From positions 1 to 64,000 of IMG/VR virus record IMGVR_UViG_3300038463_000730: a DNA stretch of 64,000 nt; one strand, given 5' to 3'. Positions 3,867 to 24,693 of the stretch are shown in pieces (the stretch's first letter is position 1; the number at the start of each line of letters is the position of its first letter). A program made the translations under genes and the position numbers. The notes under the pieces are model-generated. The model worked only from the letters and a program-made list of their open reading frames with translations. It was not told the DNA's origin and made no database searches.

Positions 3867-4103
3867 TCATCGACATTGTTGGTCCAAGTATGCAACAACA
3901 TTGTTATTTACCGCATTGAGTGGAAGACCGTTCTTCATCAGCTCTTCCAATACATCGAGCTTCGCTTGTTGCGGTTTGCCTCGACCGTTCTCCCAGCGAT
4001 TGATCGTGACATAGTCAACGCCAATCAAGCTAGCGAGCGCCTTCTGTGTTATCGCATTCTTGCGTCGGAACTCGCGTAGCTTCCGAGGAAAGGCCTGATC
4101 CAT
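3867..4103 (-). CDS. XRE-family helix-turn-helix transcriptional regulator
   Basis: LREFRRKNAITQKALASLIGVDYVTINRWENGRGKP matches the HTH_3 pattern. Confidence 0.85.
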   Translation of the reverse strand: MDQAFPRKLREFRRKNAITQKALASLIGVDYVTINRWENGRGKPQQAKLDVLEELMKNGLPLNAVNNNVVAYLDQQCR

Positions 4104-4435
4104 TACCGCACCGTATACATCCGGACTCGGCCAGTATCGGAGTCTTCCCAAACGAGACCAAGTTCGAGAAGTTTCGCCACCGTGACTTCCATGATGTCGA
4201 GTGCCATCAAGGGTGGAACCGAATCACTCATCTCCGAAGCATAGGCAATCGGGCGAGCGATCCTGACCATCGTATGGATTCCGGGACGAACCAATGCGAT
4301 TTTCTCACCGATAGATGTAGTATTGGATGTGTCGATGATCGTTCCCATACTGTACGGGCCATCATCGAGCACTCCGAACATCCGAACCGGAACGCCGCGT
4401 TTGATCTCCTCAGCCTTGATTGCTCGCCACATCAC
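4103..4435 (-). CDS. hypothetical protein
   Basis: 110 aa ORF; TAATG coupling to downstream gene. Confidence 0.6.
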   Translation of the reverse strand: MMWRAIKAEEIKRGVPVRMFGVLDDGPYSMGTIIDTSNTTSIGEKIALVRPGIHTMVRIARPIAYASEMSDSVPPLMALDIMEVTVAKLLELGLVWEDSDTGRVRMYTVR

Positions 4436-5148: not shown

Positions 5149-5979
5149 GTGCCAAGAAGTAACAAAGCTGTAGTTAAAAAGAGCCTCGCCGGAAAACGTT
5201 TTGGAAAGCTAACCGTTGTCGCACCGATATTTCTAACCAAACGTAACCATTACGGATGGGAATGCAAGTGCGATTGCGGCGCTACCGTCTTGGCGTCAGC
5301 CTACGAACTGCGCTGCGGTAGCACAATCAGTTGCGGTTGCGCAAGACGAAAGCCAAAACCACCTCGAAAACCGCGAGTACTCAAAACCGATCCACCAATC
5401 AAACAACCAGATTCCTTTTGGGAAAAAGTTGATAAGACGGATGGATGTTGGCTTTGGGTCGCCGGAAAAGATTCGGGAGGATACGGTATATACCGTAAAC
5501 GTCCAGCTCATCGAGTTTCTTACGTTTTAGCGTATGGCAGCATCCCAGATGGACATATCATCTGTCACACGTGCGATCATCGTGGTTGCGTTAGACCGGA
5601 GCATCTATATGCCGGGACCGATGCTGACAATGCGCGCGACCGAAACATGTGTGGTAAGGGTGCGAGAAACTTCAGCGGTCCAGTAAAGAAAACTACACCG
5701 CTAGAGAAGTTTTGGGCGCGAGTAAATAAGAACCCTGATGGTTGCTGGGAATGGACAGCATCACTAAGTTCCAACGGTTACGGTCGTTTTAGTCCGACCT
5801 CTTGCTACCGTGATCGTGTTTTAGCTCACCGCTTCAGTTACGCACAATTCGTCGGAGCAATTCCAGACGGAATGATAATCTGCCATCACTGTGACAACAG
5901 AAAGTGCGTGCGACCAGATCACTTATTCGTTGGAACGAACGCTGACAATGCAAAAGATCGTATACTCAAAGGGCGATGA
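5149..5979 (+). CDS. HNH homing endonuclease with two HNH domains
   Basis: N-terminal GKRFGKLTV; two copies of FW.KV.K...CW.W...AHR.SY...ICH.CD...CVRP.HL..GT.ADNA.D; antisense to flanking genes. Confidence 0.9.
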   Translation: MPRSNKAVVKKSLAGKRFGKLTVVAPIFLTKRNHYGWECKCDCGATVLASAYELRCGSTISCGCARRKPKPPRKPRVLKTDPPIKQPDSFWEKVDKTDGCWLWVAGKDSGGYGIYRKRPAHRVSYVLAYGSIPDGHIICHTCDHRGCVRPEHLYAGTDADNARDRNMCGKGARNFSGPVKKTTPLEKFWARVNKNPDGCWEWTASLSSNGYGRFSPTSCYRDRVLAHRFSYAQFVGAIPDGMIICHHCDNRKCVRPDHLFVGTNADNAKDRILKGR

Positions 5980-8411: not shown

Positions 8412-8591
8412 TTAAAGACTGTTCCTCTTCCGGTGCTCGATCCATTCGATCGCTTCCTTGGCAACATCGTCGATCTGTTTCAGGTAAGCCTGCGCCGAGG
8501 TAACCTTCTGCCCTTCCTGAGCCAACTTCCGAATCTTCTCCAACGCTACCGTCAACCGTTCGACTTCCTTGATCTTGGCCGTGCTCACCAT
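8412..8591 (-). CDS. small helical protein (not in ORF track)
   Basis: Hand-translated 59 aa MVSTAKIKEVERLTVALEKIRK...; GGAGG RBS. Confidence 0.65.
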   Translation of the reverse strand: MVSTAKIKEVERLTVALEKIRKLAQEGQKVTSAQAYLKQIDDVAKEAIEWIEHRKRNSL

Positions 8592-8691
8592 TACCTCCGA
8601 CCTCCGGTTACCGGTCTGCCATGTCTTCCTGGCGCTTCTCTTCGTTCATTCGGGATATGGCATTCCCATATGCATATTCAGTCATCTTAGC

Positions 8692-9183
8692 ATGACCGAA
8701 GATGAAAGAAAAGAACGCCAACGGATCAGTAATCTCCGCTACAACAAGGAAAACAAAGCCAAACGTGCAGAACATCAGCGCAAGATTGCACCACAATTAC
8801 GGGCTTATCGCAAGGCTTGGCGTGCAAAGAACCGCGACAGATGCCACGCTGCGGAACAGAAACGAGCCACGAAGTTTGAGCGCAGACTCAACCACTCCAT
8901 TGGTGCGGCAAAAGTGCGTAACCTGGAATTTACTTTGAGCGAGGAGGAGTGCCGGAATCTTATCGAGATGCCCTGTTACTATTGTAATAATGAGCTTGGC
9001 GAGAAGACGATGACGAGTCTAGGGCTTGATAGGTTGGACCCAAAACTTGGCTATGTATCTGGAAACTGCGTTTCATGCTGTAAGATATGCAACTTCCTCA
9101 AGTCCGATCGGTTCACCCCCGAAGAGACAAAGGCTGCCGTTGATGCCATTTTGGCTCATCGTCGTTCTTGCATTGCCTCGTAA
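8692..9183 (+). CDS. HNH/His-Me finger endonuclease
   Basis: LEFTLS...PCYYC...GLDRLDPKLGYVSGNCVSCCKICNFLKS; antisense to block. Confidence 0.8.
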   Translation: MTEDERKERQRISNLRYNKENKAKRAEHQRKIAPQLRAYRKAWRAKNRDRCHAAEQKRATKFERRLNHSIGAAKVRNLEFTLSEEECRNLIEMPCYYCNNELGEKTMTSLGLDRLDPKLGYVSGNCVSCCKICNFLKSDRFTPEETKAAVDAILAHRRSCIAS

Positions 9184-14780: not shown

Positions 14781-14800
14781 GATCGTCTCCGGGAAAAGGA

Positions 14801-14940
14801 AGCCCCTTGTCGGACTCGAACCGACATGATCTAATCCCACCAGAGTGCTCTGGAGCACCGAGGCTCTCGCCTTCGTTGCTTGTAGATTCGATCTCCCCCG
14901 TCTAGCACTCGACGGGTTGCCCGCCAACCGGGCAAGGGGC
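14801..14940 (-). ncRNA. tRNA-like RNA (acceptor stem plus T-arm, non-canonical 116-nt core)
   Basis: GCCCCTT...GTCGG-TTCGAGT-CCGAC-AAGGGGC-T; perfect 7-bp acceptor, no canonical anticodon arm, no CCA. Confidence 0.65.
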
Positions 14941-14949
14941 GTAGCGAAG

Positions 14950-15780
14950 GCGCCTGTATGTAAACTTACTACCACTATGAGAATTAGATGCGTGAGTTGG
15001 GTTCGACCCTAGCGTCTGTCCCAACGATGATCAGTCGTCGGTTCTGCGCCTCACGCAACGGCTTTCGGCCTGTGCATTGCCTGTCGCTCGGTCCCGTTAT
15101 GTTCGTTAGAAAGCCTTGCTTCTAACTATCGGCTACGCTTCTGAGAGGAACACGAAAGTCTACTGATCCGAGCTGGTCTCTGTTGCAACAGAGCCAGTCA
15201 CGTCAGCTAACGAGTGTTCAATCGTCATCGGCACGTGCCTAACCCGTTCGCTACTCGCCTTGCATCTCGGCGCAATGTTGAATCGGGCTGTTTGGTGGGA
15301 CGCAGGATACACTCAGGTTATGTAGGCTTCCCCGGAGCTACCTCTCATCACAATGAGAACTGGGTCGTAGTTGCAAAGGCGGTTCTTCTTTCCAGAGCGC
15401 TGGCCTTGCGGCGTTCTGGTAAAGCTAACCCGAGGCCCTTAGCAACGGGTCACGTCCTACTCACTATTCGGCGTGACCTTCTATAGACCGTTAGTAGCGT
15501 TGTATTACTACGGGGCCGTTGCCGCCTTACCGCGGCGCGGGCATACCCTTGGTCATTGGACACCTCTTTCGCTGCGAAGATGTTTGCCCGTTCACCCGCT
15601 GACCGTCATGGGTTAGTAGGGTCGCACTCTCTCACAAGGTTCGCGCAGACCATCATTGGGTATAAACTTAGTTCGCTGCTACACCATTGGAGCACCTCAC
15701 GTTTGAACCGGAGGATTCTTCGCGTCCTCCGTAGCTTGTACTGCCGAAAGGCACCGTGTCAACGGCGCCGGATCGGTAGA
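14950..15780 (-). ncRNA. candidate large structured ncRNA (~0.8 kb)
   Basis: No credible ORF; GNRA-capped hairpins on minus strand (15060, 15392, 15521); GAAUA/AGUA internal motif at 15448-15478. Confidence 0.6.
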
Positions 15781-16186: not shown

Positions 16187-16744
16187 ATGAAAGATTACGA
16201 TACCTGTCCAGGTTGCCGTGGAACGAAACGTAAAGTAGCGAAGCTATGTCGCCCTTGCCGCTACCCAGTCGGTAAAACTAAAGTATGCAAAGGCCCCTGC
16301 GGTCTCGACTTGCCTATTACGGCATTTCGTATCCGAACAAGGAAGACGCCAAAGCCTCGCTCACGTTGTATGGGATGTGAAAGTAAGGCAGAACGCAAGC
16401 GTTACAATGCCAGACCTATTGCAACCCGCAAGGTATCCACTCGCCGATGGGAGAAGAACAACCCAGAGAAGCATAAGGCGCAACTGCTACGCGCTCGGGT
16501 TCGCAAGCTCGGGTTAGCTTCTGATATGGATAGGATCATTGCGTTTGCCGCGCAGTATTCCGCCTGTCCATTGTGCGGCACTACTAAGAGTGACTTGGCT
16601 GGTTCTCGCATGTGCATTGACCACGACCACAAGACCGGCAAGTTTCGTGGTCTTATCTGCGAAGCATGTAACTTTGGCATCGGCCAATGCAAAGATAGCC
16701 CGGCAACATTACGTGCTGCGGCAGACTATCTCGAATCAGCCTAA
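16187..16744 (+). CDS. recombination endonuclease VII-like homing endonuclease
   Basis: CPLC...IDHDHKTGKFRGLICEACNFGIG...D...LRAAADYL; antisense to block. Confidence 0.9.
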   Translation: MKDYDTCPGCRGTKRKVAKLCRPCRYPVGKTKVCKGPCGLDLPITAFRIRTRKTPKPRSRCMGCESKAERKRYNARPIATRKVSTRRWEKNNPEKHKAQLLRARVRKLGLASDMDRIIAFAAQYSACPLCGTTKSDLAGSRMCIDHDHKTGKFRGLICEACNFGIGQCKDSPATLRAAADYLESA

Positions 16745-18355: not shown

Positions 18356-18455
18356 TGGTGCCCGCCCAGGGGATCGAACCCCGGCATACTCCCGACCTTG
18401 TACTTCGGTAAGGGTACTTCCCAACCTATCCTACTCTACCTTCACCTGGCCAGGC
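18356..18455 (-). ncRNA. tRNA-like RNA with encoded CCA
   Basis: GCCTGGC...CGGGG-TTCGATC-CCCTG-GGCGGGC-A-CCA; interior is not a cloverleaf. Confidence 0.6.
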
Positions 18456-18536
18456 TTAGTAGAGTCCTTTCAAATTGGGTTCTCGGTAACTTGCCAGTCA
18501 CCGCCTGTTACGGGCTAACTTGGTCAACCAGTCGCG

Positions 18537-18833: not shown

Positions 18834-20120
18834 TCATCCCTCCGAATGGTTCTGGTTCGACTTGTTCGAACCGTTGATCAGCTTGTCGATGTCTTCGGCC
18901 GAACCTACCAGGCCCTTGCCGAACACCGCCTCCTGCAACATGGAAGCAAGCGACTTACCCTTACCCGAACGAGCGCCGGTCTTGGTGCTCTTCGTGTAGA
19001 CCCCGCTAGCCTTCGCTTCCTCACGAAGGATGTCACGAATCTCGTAAACGATCGGATCCTGGATCGTGAGGCCGAGCGCGGTCATGTTGACCACGTACCG
19101 CTTCGCGTCTTCGTAGGCGAGGAGCTTCTCCGTCGTCACGGCCCCCGGAATGGTACGCCGAGTCCAATCACGCACGTCCACCTTGTCTGCCAGCGGAACG
19201 CCGAGGAGATCCATGAACACCCGTCGAGCCGCTTCGATCATCTGGTACGCATTGATCTGGCAACGACGATACTGAAGCATGTAGCGAGTCGTGCCAGCGT
19301 GGGAGCTGAGTAGCTCGGAGTGAGTCTCGACGATGACCCGAGCGTCGATCCCACCCTTCTCGCGAGTCTGGCAGATCATCTGCCTACGAGCCTTGCGGTA
19401 CTCAGTAAGCAATGCGTTCGTGTCATCGACCTTGGCCTTGGAGTTACGACGCTGGCCGAGAACCGTATCACGATCCCCCGTGTTTGCCACGGCGCCGATG
19501 TTGCCACCGATCATCCTTCGCACATCGACGAAGAACGCTTCGATTGCCTGTTTCTGTTGAACCGTTCCCATGTGGACCGGCTTGACGTTGATCGTTGCGC
19601 TCGGCGTATACGCTTCGGGAACAATACCCTTTGCGTAGTTCAGCTCAGGGCGCGGAGCGATTTCCTTCGCTTGCGCCGCTTCGGCAGCTTTCGCCGCACG
19701 CCGCTCTTTACGTGACTTCGGTTGTTCCTCTTCCTTCAGCTTCGCGTTGACCTCCTTGATCAACCCGATCGCCTTGCGGAAGTTGCGACGCTCTTCCTGG
19801 TTGATCTGGCGATCACCGGGTTGCGCCGGGATCAGCTTGATCCGAACATTCTCACCGATGCGAACCGGCTCCGGCGTGGCCCGACCAGAGATCGGTTTGG
19901 CAGACTTCAGCAAGTCATCCAAGTCCATCCGCACGACCACGGCCAACGCCGTGTAGGCCGCTCTGATCTGATCGTTCGACTTCCCGGTCAAGATGCCGTT
20001 GATATACGGCTGGGCCTTGGGAAGCTGAGCCAACTCGTCCGCGTGTTCCTCAACGAACTTCCTCGCGGGCATGAACGTCGCGGCCTTCTGCAATTCCCTC
20101 AACATATCCGGTTTGAGCAT
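18834..20120 (-). CDS. hypothetical protein (428 aa, basic)
   Basis: Long ORF, GGAG RBS, no recognised domain. Confidence 0.8.
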   Translation of the reverse strand: MLKPDMLRELQKAATFMPARKFVEEHADELAQLPKAQPYINGILTGKSNDQIRAAYTALAVVVRMDLDDLLKSAKPISGRATPEPVRIGENVRIKLIPAQPGDRQINQEERRNFRKAIGLIKEVNAKLKEEEQPKSRKERRAAKAAEAAQAKEIAPRPELNYAKGIVPEAYTPSATINVKPVHMGTVQQKQAIEAFFVDVRRMIGGNIGAVANTGDRDTVLGQRRNSKAKVDDTNALLTEYRKARRQMICQTREKGGIDARVIVETHSELLSSHAGTTRYMLQYRRCQINAYQMIEAARRVFMDLLGVPLADKVDVRDWTRRTIPGAVTTEKLLAYEDAKRYVVNMTALGLTIQDPIVYEIRDILREEAKASGVYTKSTKTGARSGKGKSLASMLQEAVFGKGLVGSAEDIDKLINGSNKSNQNHSEG

Positions 20121-20225
20121 GTGATTGTCTCCCGTTGTGATTGACTACCATCGGTCCCGATCAATGCGGGATGATAGTCGGTTTGATAAGGAGAGTAAGT
20201 GTAACTAAGCTATGTTGCACGTGAA

Positions 20226-20279
20226 ACATTGGGTAGGGACTTATTGACATTGCCATCTTTACCGAACCGACCCCAATGT
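20226..20279 (-). promoter_or_regulatory. structured RNA motif, copy 1 (GGTAA...GTCAATAAGTCCC inside a stem)
   Basis: Stem ACATTGGGGT/ACCCAATGT enclosing a core shared with 21127-21186. Confidence 0.5.
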
Positions 20280-20286
20280 CGAAGCA

Positions 20287-20301
20287 CAATGGAATGGAGC
20301 C
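20287..20301 (-). promoter_or_regulatory. 15-nt motif copy 1 (GGCTCCATTCCATTG on minus strand)
   Basis: Exact repeat, five copies. Confidence 0.7.
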
Positions 20302-20315
20302 GTTACGTTGACCCG

Positions 20316-20651
20316 TTACTCCGCGGCCTTGTCTCCTGTACCGGCCAGGTTCTCCCAATGAGGAGATATATCCTCCGGATCAGCGAACATGGAGAACGCG
20401 CCGCCGTATCCGTACTGCGCATTGAGCGCCTGGCTCACCTCCGTCATCGCGTGCTCTTTCGACACCGTGTCACGCACGCTGAATGGTAGGTAGTCGATCT
20501 GAACCATCTCGATCGATTCCCTAACCATCAGCCGATCGATGTCACGTCGGAGCTTGTTGACTCGCCGCTTCTCCGTTCTGCGCTGGAGCATTCCTCCGCC
20601 GCTAGGTAGTTGGATCATGGCGTGCTTGTGTGCTTGACGGAGCTTGATCAT
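20316..20651 (-). CDS. hypothetical protein
   Basis: 111 aa ORF. Confidence 0.65.
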   Translation of the reverse strand: MIKLRQAHKHAMIQLPSGGGMLQRRTEKRRVNKLRRDIDRLMVRESIEMVQIDYLPFSVRDTVSKEHAMTEVSQALNAQYGYGGAFSMFADPEDISPHWENLAGTGDKAAE

Positions 20652-20654
20652 CGC

Positions 20655-21092
20655 TCAGTGAACCTCCTCAGTCGTTTCGATCTTCGTCTCTTCCTTCTTG
20701 GGCCAGCCGAATGCCACCTCCTCGATGTGAAGCCGGAAGTCCTCGTCCCACGAATGGCGAACGAGCGGCTCGATGTCGCCGAGGATCTTGATCAATCGGG
20801 CCTCCTCCTCATCCCGGAGCACGTGCCAGGCATCCGTCGCCCGACGATACTGCTCGCGCACAACATTGTGCGCCTCCTCTTCCGGTGACTCGGGGCGAGG
20901 GTTGGACTTGTACCACTCCTCGATCATCGCGTTCAGTGCATCACGCTTGCCGATTTCTCGACCGAGCCGCACGTACTCATGATCGCGGAAGTTCTCCGCG
21001 TCACGCTCTTCCTCGAACGCACGAAGCGTCTTCTCGAAACGATCGCAGCAACGACAACCCGAAACGAACGTAACAACGTGAATCGTCTTCAT
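20655..21092 (-). CDS. hypothetical protein
   Basis: 145 aa ORF; GGAG RBS. Confidence 0.7.
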   Translation of the reverse strand: MKTIHVVTFVSGCRCCDRFEKTLRAFEEERDAENFRDHEYVRLGREIGKRDALNAMIEEWYKSNPRPESPEEEAHNVVREQYRRATDAWHVLRDEEEARLIKILGDIEPLVRHSWDEDFRLHIEEVAFGWPKKEETKIETTEEVH

Positions 21093-21126
21093 GGTTGCAC
21101 TCCTGCGGGTTAGAGTAACTCGATAT

Positions 21127-21186
21127 GATTCGCAGGCGGGGACTTATTGACTTGGCCCTCTTACCTATGTATCGACTCTGCGAATC
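21127..21186 (-). promoter_or_regulatory. structured RNA motif, copy 2
   Basis: Stem GATTCGCAG/CTGCGAATC enclosing GGTAA...GTCAATAAGTCCC. Confidence 0.5.
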
Positions 21187-21193
21187 CCATTAG

Positions 21194-21235
21194 AGCGCGC
21201 CGGGGGAATCGAACCCCCGTATACCATAGCGCGCT
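21194..21235 (-). ncRNA. 42-nt tRNA minihelix-like element
   Basis: AGCGCGC-TATGGTATA-CGGGGG-TTCGATT-CCCCCG-GCGCGCT-C. Confidence 0.6.
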
Positions 21236-21246
21236 TGGCCGTATTA

Positions 21247-21696
21247 CTACGCGGCCTTCGTGATCGCTTCGAGACTCTTCTTCGCGTTCGCCACGAACGA
21301 CTTACCCATCGGCGTCTCCAGCACCGATCCGTACACGGCGAGGTAATCCTCGGCGAGCTTGAGGTAGTACCCGCTGAGCGGCGCACCCTCGACCGCATCG
21401 ATCCAACGCACCGGACCCTTGCCGCCGCGCCCCTTGGACTTGAACCCCTCCTTGCCGGTGAGCTTGTCCAGCGCCGAGTTGATTCGCCACGAAGTCACGG
21501 CGAGGAAGGTCTTGGACTTCACCCCGTTCGCATCGGCCTTCTGCGGAACGAGGCCCGACGCCATCATTCCGGCGAGCGCGGTGAACAGGATCTCCGTCGT
21601 CGTGAATACACGCGGTCCCGGCTTCGGAGCCGCAACCTTGGCAGGCGTGGTGTTGGTCTTGATCGAAATCGCAGCGAGAACCTTGTTCGTGTGCAT
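21247..21696 (-). CDS. hypothetical basic protein
   Basis: 149 aa from MHTNKVL; GGAG RBS. Confidence 0.7.
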   Translation of the reverse strand: MHTNKVLAAISIKTNTTPAKVAAPKPGPRVFTTTEILFTALAGMMASGLVPQKADANGVKSKTFLAVTSWRINSALDKLTGKEGFKSKGRGGKGPVRWIDAVEGAPLSGYYLKLAEDYLAVYGSVLETPMGKSFVANAKKSLEAITKAA

Positions 21697-21750
21697 GACT
21701 TGTTTCTCTCCTGGTTTGAGTAACCGTAACTCGCAACTACCGGCCCTCCA

Positions 21751-21765
21751 CAATGGAATGGAGCC
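21751..21765 (-). promoter_or_regulatory. 15-nt motif copy 2
   Basis: Exact CAATGGAATGGAGCC on plus strand. Confidence 0.7.
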
Positions 21766-21847
21766 GCTTGTGACATTGGATCGCACGACTGGATTCGATC
21801 CGTAGGAACATAGTCGCGTTGACTACTTCCGTCGTGCGAAGACTTGC

Positions 21848-22648
21848 TCAGCCACGTGAGAACGTGACACGGGTTTCCGAGACCTTGACTCCGAATCCCA
21901 AGGTAGCCCTCGGATTGTGAGTCTGGTGTGTGATCGGTCCCTTCTTCTCGCGGCTCGTTTGACTTGCCGCCGCCGATGCTGCTTCGACGTAGGTGACATG
22001 GATCACCTTCGGATTACCGCTCGGATAGTTCTGGCAGACGCGGATCGTACCCTCGTCCGTCTCCACGGGTTCCTGCTCTTCGTAACGAACCCGCATACCC
22101 TGATGCTGGCCTCGTTCGGACTTCAGGACCCACCAACGGCAACCCGCACGGTGAGCCTCGAACGCCTTGTCATAGTTCGCCGTACGAGTCTCCTCGCCCG
22201 GAATCTCGACAATGAGCTGAAACGGCTTGAATGCGCCGGAGTGTTTCACGACACGCTTCGCCGTGAAACCGCCGATGAAGTACACACCCCACTTCTCCCA
22301 GAGATCCGTATCGACGTTCTCTTGGAAGATAGCGGACTTCTCGTTCCGCTTCGCCGCCTCATAGGCAACGGCCACGTCCGGGTCTCCGAGCCCGATATCA
22401 CGAGCGAGTTTCCCGCATGAGAACACGGCCTTGTTCCGCGTCTCCAGATCCGTCTCGCACAACGCATTGTGCAGTTTGAACGCCAGGGTCTCCCCTTCGC
22501 TCGCATCCTTCGGAACGCTCACGCGCCCTTCGGGCTTTGCCTTCGCCGGAGCCTTTGCAGGTTTCGGCGCTTCTTTCGCGACGGGCTTACCGATCACCTT
22601 GATCGGGGTGATCGTACCCGTTTCACGGTTTCGCTTGATCACTTGCAT
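21848..22648 (-). CDS. hypothetical protein
   Basis: 266 aa from MQVIKRN; GGAGG RBS. Confidence 0.75.
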   Translation of the reverse strand: MQVIKRNRETGTITPIKVIGKPVAKEAPKPAKAPAKAKPEGRVSVPKDASEGETLAFKLHNALCETDLETRNKAVFSCGKLARDIGLGDPDVAVAYEAAKRNEKSAIFQENVDTDLWEKWGVYFIGGFTAKRVVKHSGAFKPFQLIVEIPGEETRTANYDKAFEAHRAGCRWWVLKSERGQHQGMRVRYEEQEPVETDEGTIRVCQNYPSGNPKVIHVTYVEAASAAASQTSREKKGPITHQTHNPRATLGFGVKVSETRVTFSRG

Positions 22649-22673
22649 TCGCGTCACCTCCGTTGTTGTTTCG

Positions 22674-22688
22674 CAATGGAATGGAGCC
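22674..22688 (-). promoter_or_regulatory. 15-nt motif copy 3
   Basis: Exact repeat. Confidence 0.7.
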
Positions 22689-22689
22689 A

Positions 22690-23955
22690 ATTGCTTAAGT
22701 TGCGAGTTTCCTCACATTCAAACCCACGTATCTAACACGGAGTCGTCATCATCGAACGGTAACTCCCATACTACAGCAATCAAGCGTAGATATGTTGTGT
22801 AGCAGATTCGTAGGCTTGAATGCGAAGGCCAGGGTTCTCACCGTATGGTTTAGCCGATACAGGAAAACCCTGGCTTCGCAAGTTTATGCTTAGAGACCAA
22901 CCTACCAACTAACCCGCTCGGTTCACATACACTTTACCCCATATGACACTGATAGGCGTCCGGCATTGCTCGCCGATGACTCTCTCCTACCTATGGCCGT
23001 GTTGAGATTACCACTAGACCTAGACGCCTGGCATTATCCCGCCAATGGCTTTCTTCTCGGTTTCGTGATCCGATGCACACATTCAAGTGTGACACTGGTA
23101 TCTAGTAACACGATGCAACCCGTAACAGCGAATTAGTAACTCACGTATCACCCGGCACAACCCACTAGGCTTGCGTACCTACTTCCTTTCACACGGCGTT
23201 TTTACACGCCTCACCATGTATGTAGCCTTTCGGCATCACGGCGAGTTTTCATGTTACTCGCTTTCGGCCCCTACACACTTACCCGGTCAACGATTCCAAT
23301 TCACGCTCAACCTACACACCAGGCCAAGGCCAAGTTTTCAGCTAATCATGTTTCGGTTTCTCGCGGGTTAGCATGTAGCTTTGCGCGCCCCTAGCAGATT
23401 GCGAAGACAATACGCTTTCGGTACGGCGCTTCGCATACGAAGAGCTATCTCCTGTCCCTTAGCGATACGGCTTACAAGGCCATACGGTATACCCCAATGT
23501 CAAAGGCGCCCGGTACTAACTCACCGATAGCTTTCTCCTTTGACCTTTCGGTCACTCCGCACCCTCTAACACTGGACTAGTCGCGACCCCTTGGCATCGC
23601 AACCCTATCCCGTAGAGTGAGAGTCATGGTTACTGTCCCTTTCGGAACGCCAACTAGTTAGCTGGCCCGACCTACTCGTTTCGGATATACTATCTCGCCT
23701 ACTCTAGGGAGACAGTCTCTCCGTTTCTTATAGTCGTCCTACTTGCAACGGGTTCCCATTCCCGATGCGTTCAGCATTAGCCCACCTCTCCCGTCAAGGA
23801 GCGAGGTCATATGATGGGCGCCACGTTATGCCCTAGAGGCTAGACTTACTCCGAGGACCCCGTAGGGTAGGCATACCGCCCGGAGGGAACTAGCCACCCT
23901 ACCAGCGAGCGGCTGATAGGTGGGTCGTGGGAGTCGGATTCGGCTCCACCCACTG
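22690..23955 (-). ncRNA. candidate giant structured ncRNA (~1.3 kb)
   Basis: ORF-free; many minus-strand GAAA/GNRA hairpins (23225, 23541, 23410s) and long stem at 22822-22879. Confidence 0.65.
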
Positions 23956-23959
23956 CAAG

Positions 23960-23974
23960 CAATGGAATGGAGCC
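23960..23974 (-). promoter_or_regulatory. 15-nt motif copy 4
   Basis: Exact repeat. Confidence 0.7.
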
Positions 23975-24059
23975 TAGTCATCTCGCGGAACCGAATCGCG
24001 AGACCGCGGCAACCCCGCTTTTCAGCGGGGCGGCATCGCTGCGGCTCAAACCCGGACCA

Positions 24060-24074
24060 CAATGGAATGGAGCC
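24060..24074 (-). promoter_or_regulatory. 15-nt motif copy 5
   Basis: Exact repeat; preceded on minus strand by palindrome GAGCCTACCGATCGGTAGGCTC. Confidence 0.7.
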
Positions 24075-24124
24075 TACCGATCGGTAGGCTCTGATTCTTG
24101 TGAGAGTAGATCGCGCGCCCGCGT

Positions 24125-24351
24125 TGCACGTACCATGCCAGCCCAATTTGACGCGAGACAGCAATGAGACGACGCGCTGCGTTATGGCATGTTTCGAGCT
24201 ATATAATGCATAAAAGATACCTACAATGTCTTTACAATAACATTGTAATTGATCTGGTATGATCTAAGCTATATATTGCACGGAACATACCAATCATACT
24301 CCAGGCCTGGCACGGAACTTGCCTGCCACCCGCCGCTGGCACGAATCTTGC
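24125..24351. promoter_or_regulatory. cluster of sigma54 (-24/-12)-like sites, both strands
   Basis: TGGCACG-N4-TTGC exact at 24308 and 24337 (+); GG-N10-GC variants at 24185 and 24255 (+), 24125 and 24277 (-). Confidence 0.6.
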
Positions 24352-24368
24352 CTGGATAGAGCGACAAA

Positions 24369-24442
24369 CTGGTGAAAACTCTGGCAGATAACCTGGCAGA
24401 TAACCTGGTGAAACTCTGGCGGTAAAACTTGGCGAAACTGGG
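24369..24442. repeat. phased 10-12-nt CTGG repeats
   Basis: CTGGTGAAAACT, CTGGCAGATAAC x2, CTGGTGAAACT, CTGGCGGTAAAA, CTTGGCGAAA, CTGGG. Confidence 0.75.
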
Positions 24443-24693
24443 ATCAACCCAGCTACGACTCCGATATTCCCCGGCATTGCCCAGCGCTACTGAATCAAAA
24501 CCAGATTAAGCACATCGGTTATTTCAATTTCTTTTGGGAAACTAAAGATCTGGACATAATTCTTGGTCTGGAACGGATCTCTAACCTCGTTTCTAGCCAG
24601 AAGCCAAACCGTTTCCAGTACTTAGCCGATAAAAAAGAAATTTTACGTATCTAGCTGGCCGTTCCTGCTCCCGAATCAGCATACCTTTGAGGA

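What the first reader, a model, noticed from the sequence alone, without database searches (positions are those of the whole stretch)
20287..24074. Exact 15-nt motif GGCTCCATTCCATTG repeated five times along the leading end of the minus-strand block
Seen: CAATGGAATGGAGCC on the plus strand at 20287, 21751, 22674, 23960 and 24060. All copies have the same orientation, are intergenic, and lie 25-170 nt upstream of a gene start or flank the giant RNA candidate. The flanks differ. Inference: a phage-specific promoter element, a nut/boxA-like antitermination site, or an endonuclease processing site that releases the ncRNA and downstream mRNAs.
Basis: partly seen in the sequence, partly recalled or inferred. 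Interest (0 to 1): 0.66.

Follow-up and report, generated by a model that had tools for sequence, protein, structure and literature searches.

The report
Boundary tag of a giant-RNA operon
Five identical 15-letter tags mark the unit boundaries at the head of an operon in a roughly 0.5-Mb peat megaphage; its first product is a 1.3-kb structured RNA, and the tags most likely act in the RNA (pairing and cutting signals), not as promoters.

Summary
GGCTCCATTCCATTG occurs five times exactly, all on the minus strand and all intergenic. There is no other copy with two mismatches or fewer in the 434,688-bp record, and three independent assemblies are identical.

New findings:
- The single best pairing partner for the motif in the genome is a 14-nt "anti-motif" 4 nt downstream of copy B. 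It forms a hairpin with B or a closing helix with copy C around a 1.27-kb region. That region is ORF-free and its predicted structure is specific to the minus-sense strand.
- The first gene after the RNA (ORF1) has remote homologues in other metagenomic contigs, and they show the same architecture. This is sigma54-type -24/-12 elements, then 1-3 direct repeats, then a 0.6-0.8 kb gene-free region, then ORF1.
- One relative carries a clear variant of the motif (GGTTCCATCATTCCATTGTG), again forming the first hairpin of the RNA, in one or two copies.
- At gene junctions where this phage has the motif, relatives have repeated tRNA-like minihelices. This phage also has three tRNA-like elements.

Best reading (about 0.4): a transcribed, lineage-specific boundary or processing tag. 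A promoter reading is disfavoured. An operator, an antitermination site and a recombination boundary remain possible. No RNA data exist.

The parts
24060..24074 (-). Motif copy A (GGCTCCATTCCATTG). Its first 5 nt are the end of a 22-bp perfect palindrome.
23960..23974 (-). Motif copy B, the 5' strand of the first hairpin of the structured RNA.
   Evidence: Hairpin 23938-23978: -22.1 kcal/mol, z -4.84, 0 of 200 shuffles fold as well.
23942..23955 (-). Anti-motif CAGUGGGUGGAGCC, the only strong complement to the motif on any transcript strand of the genome. Pairing includes 2 G.U pairs and 1 bulged U.
   Evidence: Duplex energy -23.0 kcal/mol. It is the best of about 72,000 windows outside the trivial antisense strand. 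The next best in the 18-25 kb unit is -15.7.
22689..23959 (-). 1,271-nt ORF-free structured RNA candidate between copies B and C.
   Evidence: Multiple stops in all six frames. Only ORF-free gap over 1 kb in the record. Minus-sense halves z -2.95 and -6.45, against plus-sense -0.22 and -1.54. CCGAAAG occurs 5 times against 0.18 expected. No Rfam family.
22674..22688 (-). Motif copy C, at the 3' boundary of the RNA, 12 nt before the Shine-Dalgarno sequence of ORF1. It pairs with the anti-motif in the global MFE fold.
21751..21765 (-). Motif copy D, in the spacer between ORF1 and ORF2.
20287..20301 (-). Motif copy E, in the spacer between ORF4 and ORF5.
24070..24091 (.). 22-bp perfect palindrome GAGCCTACCGATCGGTAGGCTC overlapping copy A.
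24125..24140 (-). Sigma54-type -24/-12 element TGGCATGGTACGTGCA facing the operon, 50 nt upstream of copy A.
   Evidence: A homologous element, TGGCATGGTTTTTGT, lies upstream of the motif in L366. The class is enriched across related loci.
24277..24292 (-). Second sigma54-type element, TGGTATGTTCCGTGCA, facing the operon.
24308..24351 (+). Two consensus sigma54 elements (TGGCAC-N5-TTGC at 24308 and 24337) facing the rightward genes.
   Evidence: 3 in the genome against 0.8 expected.
21851..22648 (-). ORF1 (266 aa), the conserved partner gene of the RNA. Function unknown.
   Evidence: no family. (12 remote homologue clusters). (model pLDDT 72.9, no informative fold match).
21194..21235 (-). tRNA-like minihelix (7-bp acceptor stem, 9-nt linker, T-arm) in the ORF2/ORF3 spacer.
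   Evidence: The same architecture is repeated 3 times in L368.
18837..20120 (-). ORF5 (428 aa), the second conserved gene of the module.
   Evidence: 33% identity, E 5e-27, to the gene after the ORF1 homologue in L363.
18356..18515 (-). 160-nt tRNA-like RNA candidate (acceptor stem, T-arm, 3' ACCA) in the ORF6/ORF7 spacer.
   Evidence: z -2.6

Best explanation
The 15-mer is a transcribed, lineage-specific boundary tag in the leader and intergenic spacers of one leftward operon. The operon starts at about 24.1-24.3 kb, and its first product is a 1.3-kb structured RNA.

Shown:
- There are five exact, co-oriented, intergenic copies.
- There is one unique complementary segment (the anti-motif), 4 nt after copy B.
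- B plus the anti-motif make a stable hairpin. Copy C can pair with the same anti-motif to give a 14-19 bp helix that joins the 5' and 3' ends of the RNA.
- The architecture is conserved in loci that share ORF1: sigma54-type elements, then direct repeats, then structured RNA, then ORF1.
- One relative has a motif variant that again forms the first hairpin of the RNA.
- tRNA-like minihelices occupy the equivalent gene junctions in relatives and at other junctions here.

Inferred:
- The operon is transcribed from the sigma54-type elements as one long RNA.
- The tag then works in that RNA to define unit ends.
- It could do so as a double-stranded tag:anti-tag stem (an RNase III-type substrate, as in rRNA precursors and T7 early RNA). 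Or it could act as a single-stranded pyrimidine-rich site read by a module-encoded protein, with ORF1 the obvious candidate.
- On this reading it does the job that RNase P/Z substrates (the tRNA-like elements) do at the other junctions.
- The identity of all copies would be kept by the need to match a single partner.
For: - Exactness and uniqueness of the motif.
- Position downstream of the only promoter-like elements, with no intrinsic terminators between copies.
- The anti-motif is the best partner genome-wide (-23.0 kcal/mol; next best in the unit -15.7).
- Its G.U pairs work only in minus-sense RNA.
- The B hairpin has z -4.84.
- The global fold pairs C with the anti-motif.
- The structure is strand-specific, minus-sense z -2.95/-6.45 against plus-sense -0.22/-1.54.
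- In relative L366 the motif variant occurs twice, 117 nt apart, after sigma54-like elements. Copy 2 forms the first hairpin (z -5.84) of an 835-nt stretch with z -7.73, upstream of the ORF1 homologue.
- In L363 a different 19-nt repeat has the same A/B/C layout.
- tRNA-like minihelices punctuate every junction in L368/L369 and precede ORF1 homologues in L362, L364 and L371.
Against: - There are no RNA data at all, because no RNA run holds the sequence. No end of any RNA is known.
- Local predicted structures differ among the five copies.
- Only B has a significant nearby complement; A, D, E and C give p = 0.08-0.46.
- L363 has no anti-repeat in the sequence available.
- In L368 and L374 the possibly related repeats begin 6-7 nt after the -12 element, overlapping the expected start site. 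That position suits an operator as well.
- The 1.27-kb RNA cannot be aligned to the relatives' gene-free regions by sequence, so RNA homology rests on position only.
- ORF1 has no recognisable nuclease or RNA-binding fold.
Confidence: 0.4

Rival explanations
1. DNA operator or 'stoperator'. A lineage-specific DNA-binding protein binds the asymmetric 15-bp site just downstream of the promoter (A, B) and in intergenic spacers (C-E). It blocks initiation or elongation in an orientation-dependent way, as the monomeric repressors of Cluster A mycobacteriophages do.
For: - The site is asymmetric, intergenic and co-oriented with transcription, and the copies are exact. Stoperators have these properties (PMC9283540).
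- The repeat sequence differs between related loci while the layout is kept. Repressor-operator co-evolution would produce this.
- In L368 and L374 the repeats overlap the expected start site.
- An HTH_3 protein is encoded in the block at 3870-4151.
Against: - There are only 5 sites in 3.8 kb of a genome of about 0.5 Mb, against more than 20 genome-wide for stoperators.
- The anti-motif hairpins in two lineages, with RNA-only G.U pairs, are unexplained.
- No two-domain repressor was identified.
- There is no integrase, so no sign of lysogeny.
Confidence: 0.15
2. Promoter or start-site-proximal element. Each copy directs or tunes initiation, through an unknown phage polymerase or factor or as part of sigma54 promoter units, so that A and B are tandem promoters for the RNA.
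For: - This is the usual meaning of exact, co-oriented intergenic motifs upstream of phage genes.
- No convincing sigma70-type leftward promoter exists upstream of A.
- In L368 three sigma54-like elements are each followed after 7 nt by an 18-nt repeat at roughly 100-nt spacing.
Against: - There is no -10-like or -35-like element in or at a fixed distance from the motif.
- The -24/-12 spacing inside the motif is wrong by 2 nt (my reading).
- No T7-like polymerase, beta subunit or other candidate was found among the largest ORFs.
- B and C are predicted to be inside RNA helices.
- There are only 5 copies in the genome.
Confidence: 0.1
3. Processive antitermination site (nut/boxA/ops-like). The motif, in the nascent RNA or the non-template strand, loads a factor that lets polymerase read through the long structured RNA and the block of 24 kb or more. 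The leader-plus-spacer layout would resemble rRNA operons.
For: - Copies lie in the leader (A, B) and after the structural RNA (C), like boxA in the leader and spacer of rrn operons (established knowledge).
- All copies are downstream of the promoter-like elements.
- The block is long, unidirectional and compositionally foreign, at GC 55% against 47%.
Against: - There is no NusG/RfaH-like gene.
- The exact 15-mer is only a scattered single chance hit in prokaryote genomes, never two in one 8-kb stretch as an rrn leader plus spacer would give. The scan was cut at 120 rows.
- The sequence differs between related loci, which does not fit a conserved host factor.
- Five copies are more than known systems use.
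Confidence: 0.1
4. Recombination boundary. The copies are the shared core of cassette junctions (an att-core or PeSL-like module exchange), kept identical by recent copy-and-paste, with no regulatory role required.
For: - Identity is sharply bounded and the flanks are unrelated.
- The region is accessory and absent from a phage with 61% terminase identity.
- In relatives the unit between two copies is present (L366) or precisely absent (L365, L367), with breakpoints inside the repeat.
- Gene content between ORF1 and ORF5 differs between loci.
- PeSL repeats mediate such shuffling in T4-type phages (PMC2839356, PMC4122927).
Against: - No tyrosine or serine recombinase is in the 434-kb record.
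- No alternative joints between copies appear in four metagenomes or three assemblies of this phage.
- Only copy B has an inverted-repeat partner.
- This reading does not explain the conserved hairpin at the 5' end of the RNA.
Confidence: 0.1

Closest known systems
Processing stems of rRNA precursors and RNase III sites of the T7 early transcript (established knowledge, not tested here)
   Same: A long transcript is cut into a structural RNA and mRNAs. Sequences flanking the structural RNA pair to form a helix; here this is the anti-motif with copy C, 14-19 bp predicted. There are several sites along an early or leading operon.
   Different: Here one strand of the helix is an exact 15-mer reused five times against a single complement. 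Most copies have no partner of their own. No cleavage has been shown.
tRNA punctuation (RNase P/Z processing at tRNA-like elements between cistrons)
   Same: The motif occupies the same kind of junction as tRNA-like minihelices in this operon (21194-21235, 18356-18515) and in relatives.
   Different: The motif itself has no tRNA-like fold. Its sequence is lineage-specific, whereas the minihelix shape is shared.
Stoperators of Cluster A mycobacteriophages (PMC9283540)
   Same: Asymmetric 13-15-bp sites in promoter-proximal and short intergenic positions, oriented with transcription, specific to a lineage.
   Different: Five clustered sites rather than more than 20 genome-wide. No matching repressor was found. 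The RNA-level pairing partner has no counterpart in stoperators.
PeSL cassettes of T4-type phages (PMC2839356, PMC4122927)
   Same: Repeated short elements at gene junctions of a hypervariable region. There is copy-number change by exchange between repeats in a relative.
   Different: PeSLs are sigma70-like early promoters plus terminator stem-loops. This motif has neither.
boxA / nut and ops antitermination sites
   Same: Short transcribed elements in leaders and spacers of long operons.
   Different: No sequence match recalled to boxA or ops. No NusG paralogue. Not found as a multi-copy host element.
Large ornate bacterial and phage RNAs (GOLLD, ROOL, OLE; PMC12286853)
   Same: A large, highly structured phage-borne RNA with tRNA-like elements nearby.
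   Different: No Rfam match at gathering or lenient thresholds. At about 1.27 kb it is longer than I recall for GOLLD (own knowledge, not checked here). It is bracketed by direct repeats and linked to the ORF1 gene family.

Membership tests
Sigma70-type or single-subunit-polymerase phage promoter | -35/-10 hexamers at proper spacing, or a cognate phage RNA polymerase gene | tested here: not met
   No conserved hexamers in the flanks. The promoter scan finds none on the minus strand. PF00940 and PF00562 are absent and the large ORFs show no polymerase. The PF00940 control did not ring, so that single test is weak.
Sigma70-type or single-subunit-polymerase phage promoter | Primary transcript 5' ends at a fixed offset | not testable with these tools
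   No RNA run holds the sequence.
Sigma54 (-24/-12) promoter | GG and GC doublets 10 nt apart (TGGCAC-N5-TTGC) | tested here: not met
   Within the motif the TTG lies 2 nt too far from GG (reading). True -24/-12 matches lie upstream of the motif instead.
boxA/nut antitermination site | Match to the host rrn boxA, or presence in host rrn leader and spacer | tested here: inconclusive
   The exact 15-mer gives only single scattered hits in 185,579 species genomes, none doubled within 8 kb, but the scan stopped at 120 rows. The host is unknown.
ops/RfaH-type site | A NusG paralogue and a GGCGGTAG-type element | tested here: not met
   PF02357 is absent from the record. The motif is unlike ops.
Stoperator | Asymmetric site, intergenic, oriented with transcription | tested here: met
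   definition from PMC9283540
Stoperator | Many sites across the genome and a cognate two-domain repressor | tested here: not met
   5 sites within 3.8 kb only. Only a 94-aa HTH_3 protein in the block.
PeSL | Strong sigma70-like promoter joined to a terminator stem-loop | tested here: not met
PeSL | Exchange between copies creates indels in a hypervariable region | tested here: met
   In the relative only: L366 against L365/L367, a 117-nt unit. Not seen in this phage.
Site-specific recombination core (att / attC) | A cognate recombinase and inverted-repeat binding arms at each site | tested here: not met
   PF00589 and PF00239 absent. Only copy B has an inverted partner.
RNase III-type processing stem | About 20 bp of double-stranded RNA formed by sequences flanking the product | tested here: inconclusive
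   Predicted 14-bp core, extendable to about 19 bp, between the anti-motif and copy C. This is prediction only.
Known Rfam RNA families (GOLLD, ROOL, group I/II introns, tmRNA, tRNA) | Covariance-model match | tested here: not met
   No hit at gathering score. Only chance-level partial hits at E up to 5.

The most novel reading that the evidence does not exclude
The motif is the address tag of an undescribed phage RNA system. A giant structured RNA carries at its 5' end a short antisense segment. That segment base-pairs, in cis or after release in trans, with identical tags placed in front of the downstream genes. The folding or maturation state of the RNA, together with the conserved ORF1 protein, would thereby control the cutting or translation of the tagged messages. 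Each lineage would have evolved its own tag sequence.
Probability: 0.15. Interest if true: 0.85.

Novelty: new variant of a known kind. Interest (0 to 1): 0.62.

Why it matters
If the tags and the anti-tag define the ends of the 1.3-kb RNA, they give exact construct boundaries for expressing and solving a new large phage RNA that no RNA family library recognises.

The comparative result matters beyond this phage. It shows a reusable module in several uncultivated lineages: sigma54-type promoter clusters, leader repeats, a large structured RNA, the ORF1 and ORF5 genes, and tRNA-like punctuation. Such a module would be a new entry point into how phages make and use big noncoding RNAs, and into sigma54-dependent expression in phage-like elements, which to my knowledge is rarely described.

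It also offers a natural test bed for whether short sequence tags and tRNA-like elements are interchangeable RNA punctuation marks.

Tried and rejected
- **Exact motif in public collections.** The 15-mer gave 24 single hits in IMG/VR and 120 or more single, taxonomically scattered hits in species genomes. The 17-mer gave 87 single hits in metagenomes. No locus had two copies, apart from one 1-mismatch pair in L205. All are at chance level. Some of the metagenome hits are bacterial contigs from human-gut samples; they were only counted.
- **Relatives through single proteins.** Relatives through ORF5, ORF1 or the DUF6011 protein by pattern scan: none. Word-based protein search with ORF5 found only itself.
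- **Terminase relatives.** 69 loci were found, but the 1-54 kb region has no counterpart in the 447-kb relative. The RNA has no BLAST match in five relatives.
- **Phage collection.** No DNA similarity.
- **Reads.** Only DNA contigs, at least 99% identical, with no informative variation.
- **Trans-acting guide elsewhere in the genome.** None found with G.U allowed and up to 1 mismatch.
- **Common local RNA structure around all copies.** Not found.
- **Candidate protein partners in the record.** Recombinases, a NusG-like protein and a sigma54 activator are all absent.
- **ORF1 function.** No Pfam, PHROG or atlas hit and no informative fold match; best Z 6.2, generic helical repeats.
- **Sequence alignment of the RNA to relatives' gene-free regions.** Only the start of ORF1 aligns.
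- **De novo promoter word search in upstream regions of the whole genome.** Nothing clear.
- **GNRA hairpin count with 4-bp stems.** Not exceptional.
- **First z-score script.** It timed out.

Full report
**1. Observation**

The minus-strand 15-mer GGCTCCATTCCATTG occurs five times exactly. The plus-strand starts are 20287, 21751, 22674, 23960 and 24060. Allowing two mismatches adds nothing; 0.14 matches are expected by chance.

The window is the first 64 kb of a 434,688-bp virus record. That record holds no other copy with two mismatches or fewer, and the next-best sites have 3-4 mismatches. The flanks are unrelated up to the edge of the 15-mer.

All copies are intergenic by my reading and by the independent gene calls on the 502,994-bp source contig. 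Three independent assemblies are identical over 7.8-15 kb spanning all copies. I name the copies A to E in the direction of transcription, from 24074 down to 20287.

**2. Setting**

The record belongs to a myovirus-like megaphage from peat.
- It encodes a terminase, baseplate J, Pol III alpha, a ribonucleotide reductase and 24 tRNAs.
- The first 24 kb has 54-58% GC against about 47% elsewhere.
- That block is almost wholly minus-strand, consists of ORFans plus DUF7007, DUF2786, DUF6011, HTH_3 and metallophosphatase proteins, and carries three HNH genes on the other strand.
- The 1-54 kb region has almost no counterpart in a 447-kb phage with 61% terminase identity, so it is an accessory region.

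The motif cluster sits at the head of this block, next to the strand switch at about 24.1-24.7 kb.

**3. What lies between the copies**

Copies A and B are 100 nt apart.

Between B and C lie 1,271 nt with several stops of every kind in all six frames. This is the only ORF-free gap over 1 kb in the record.
- As minus-sense RNA its two halves fold with z -2.95 and -6.45. As plus-sense RNA the values are -0.22 and -1.54.
- The tetraloop word CCGAAAG occurs five times where 0.18 is expected.
- No Rfam family matches.

After C come ORF1 (266 aa), then D, ORF2, a tRNA-like minihelix, ORF3, ORF4, then E and ORF5 (428 aa).

Two more tRNA-like T-arm/acceptor elements lie in later spacers of the same strand. 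One is a 160-nt cloverleaf-like RNA ending in ACCA.

**4. The anti-motif**

I scanned both strands of the genome for partners of the motif RNA. Besides the trivial antisense strand, the best site is CAGUGGGUGGAGCC at 23955-23942, four nucleotides after copy B (-23.0 kcal/mol). Within the 18-25 kb unit the next best is -15.7.
- The pairing uses two G.U pairs and one bulged U, so it works only in minus-sense RNA.
- B plus the anti-motif give a hairpin that no shuffle matches (z -4.84).
- In the global fold of 24115-22640 the anti-motif pairs with copy C instead. That closes the 5' and 3' ends of the 1.27-kb RNA, while B and A pair with segments just upstream.
- With flanks, every copy can pair with the anti-motif at -27 to -31 kcal/mol.
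- No other guide-like complement exists in the genome.
- The local structures of the five copies otherwise differ. Only B has a significant nearby complement.

**5. Promoter-like elements**

No good sigma70-type leftward promoter precedes copy A.

The 24.12-24.35 kb spacer instead holds four sigma54-type -24/-12 elements that form one repeat family.
- Two face the operon, at 24292 and 24140.
- Two are consensus matches facing right, at 24308 and 24337.

Copy A starts 50 nt after the proximal element, so all copies would be transcribed. No sigma54 activator, NusG-like protein, recombinase or phage RNA polymerase was found in the record.

**6. Relatives**

A full HMMER search with ORF1 found 12 remote homologue clusters at 55-30% identity. 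Their contigs (maps) show a shared layout.

*L366 (ORF1 homologue 39% identical).*
- Two sigma54-like elements are followed by the 20-nt repeat GGTTCCATCATTCCATTGTG, twice, 117 nt apart. This is the window's motif with one transition and a 3-nt insertion.
- A gene-free stretch of about 800 nt follows, then the ORF1 homologue.
- That stretch folds with z -7.73. Its first hairpin (z -5.84) is made by repeat copy 2 and GUGGAGCC, the same word that ends the anti-motif in the window.
- L365 and L367 are identical except that they lack exactly one 117-nt repeat unit.

*L363.* It has a different 19-nt repeat in the same A/B/C positions around a 575-nt gene-free region. Then come the ORF1 homologue, a spacer with CACCATT twice, and an ORF5 homologue.

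*L368/L369.* Seven sigma54-like elements are present. Three are each followed after 7 nt by an 18-nt CCAT-containing repeat at about 100-nt spacing. Every gene junction carries a near-identical 50-nt tRNA-like minihelix with the same shape as the window's.

*L362, L364 and L371.* Each has a tRNA-like element before the ORF1 homologue. In L362, the closest relative, it stands where the window has copy C.

*Across the family.* In 45.5 kb from 11 lineages the relaxed sigma54 pattern occurs 16 times sense and 7 times antisense, against about 1 expected per strand.

**7. Interpretation**

The motif is part of a conserved module and lies in its transcribed leader and spacers. Four observations point to a function in RNA:
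- the unique anti-motif with RNA-only pairs;
- the conserved hairpin at the RNA's 5' end in two lineages;
- the bracketing of the structured RNA by repeats in three lineages;
- the positional exchange with tRNA-like elements, which are RNA signals by nature.

The repeat sequence differs between lineages while the layout is kept. The partner is therefore module-specific (the anti-tag RNA or a module protein such as ORF1), not a universal host factor.

I commit to a boundary or processing tag with confidence about 0.4. The steps 'one long sigma54-driven transcript' and 'cutting at or beside the tag' are inference.

The rivals are given with their odds:
- operator/stoperator, 0.15;
- promoter-proximal element, 0.10;
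- antitermination site, 0.10;
- recombination boundary, 0.10.

The last rival is not exclusive of the best reading, since repeats that serve as signals can also mediate exchange, as the L366 variant shows.

**8. Limits**
- No transcript data exist.
- The host is unknown.
- The relatives are short contigs.
- RNA homology between lineages rests on position and structure scores, not on an alignment.
- ORF1 has no recognisable fold.
- About 58 kb of the source contig was not available for the motif count.

Noticed in passing
window 22689-23959 (-): 1.27-kb ORF-free region with strand-specific predicted structure, five CCGAAAG tetraloop words and no Rfam match. Gene-free regions of 0.6-1.3 kb also accompany ORF1 homologues in L363, L365-367, L370, L371 and L372; the L366 stretch (835 nt folded) has z -7.73.
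   Followed up: partly
window 24125-24351: Cluster of four sigma54-type -24/-12 elements: two consensus matches on the plus strand and two near-consensus on the minus strand. They form one direct-repeat family (GGyAwGnTnCGTGCmA on the minus strand). The same class is enriched about 15-fold in loci related through ORF1; L368 has seven in 500 nt. No sigma54 activator gene is in the record.
   Followed up: partly
window 21194-21235, 18356-18515, about 14800-14850 (all -): Three tRNA-like acceptor/T-arm elements in intergenic spacers, not called by ARAGORN or Rfam. The second is a 160-nt multi-arm RNA ending in ACCA. Relatives carry repeated copies of the minihelix type at every gene junction.
   Followed up: partly
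window 14790-15700 (-): A second ORF-poor stretch of about 0.9 kb that ends in a tRNA-like T-arm (z -1.98). It may be another structured RNA.
   Followed up: partly
window 21139-21151 and 20236-20248 (-): Exact 13-mer GTCAATAAGTCCC twice, each within a longer imperfect repeat upstream of ORF3 and ORF5. There is no other exact copy in the genome.
   Followed up: partly
window 24070-24091: 22-bp perfect palindrome centred on GATC that overlaps the first 5 nt of copy A.
   Followed up: no
window 24385-24430 (-): Short tandem and dispersed repeats (GCCAGAGTTT(T)CACCAG twice, GTTATCTGCCAG twice) upstream of the leftward sigma54-like elements. They are possible activator or bending-protein sites.
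   Followed up: no
window 1-24000 against the rest of G000: The block has 54-58% GC against about 47% for the rest. It has no homologues in the nearest large relative. It contains three HNH/Endonuclease VII genes on the opposite strand (5149-5979, 8569-9183, 16187-16744).
   Followed up: partly
L355 (source contig 423561-444355): The record is labelled 'provirus', but the contig continues beyond its end with phage-like small genes, HNH and GIY-YIG endonucleases and a ribosomal protein L7/L12 homologue. No integrase is present. The provirus call looks doubtful, and the genome may be about 503 kb.
   Followed up: partly
G000 266-420 kb: 24 tRNA genes, including a CUA-anticodon (amber suppressor type) tRNA and three with odd anticodon loops. 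TAG ends only 7 of 112 long ORFs. Several further T-arm-like elements near the tRNA cluster are not called as tRNAs.
   Followed up: no
run X9 on window 20000-24600: This run's contigs join window pieces to other DNA at GATC or AATT sites, as in a proximity-ligation library. One junction links 20646 to position 364,684 of the same genome. Others link to unidentified high-GC DNA that could be the host.
   Followed up: partly
G000 96493-96612 (-): One sigma70-family (region 2) ORF of about 209 aa, the only sigma-like gene found.
   Followed up: no
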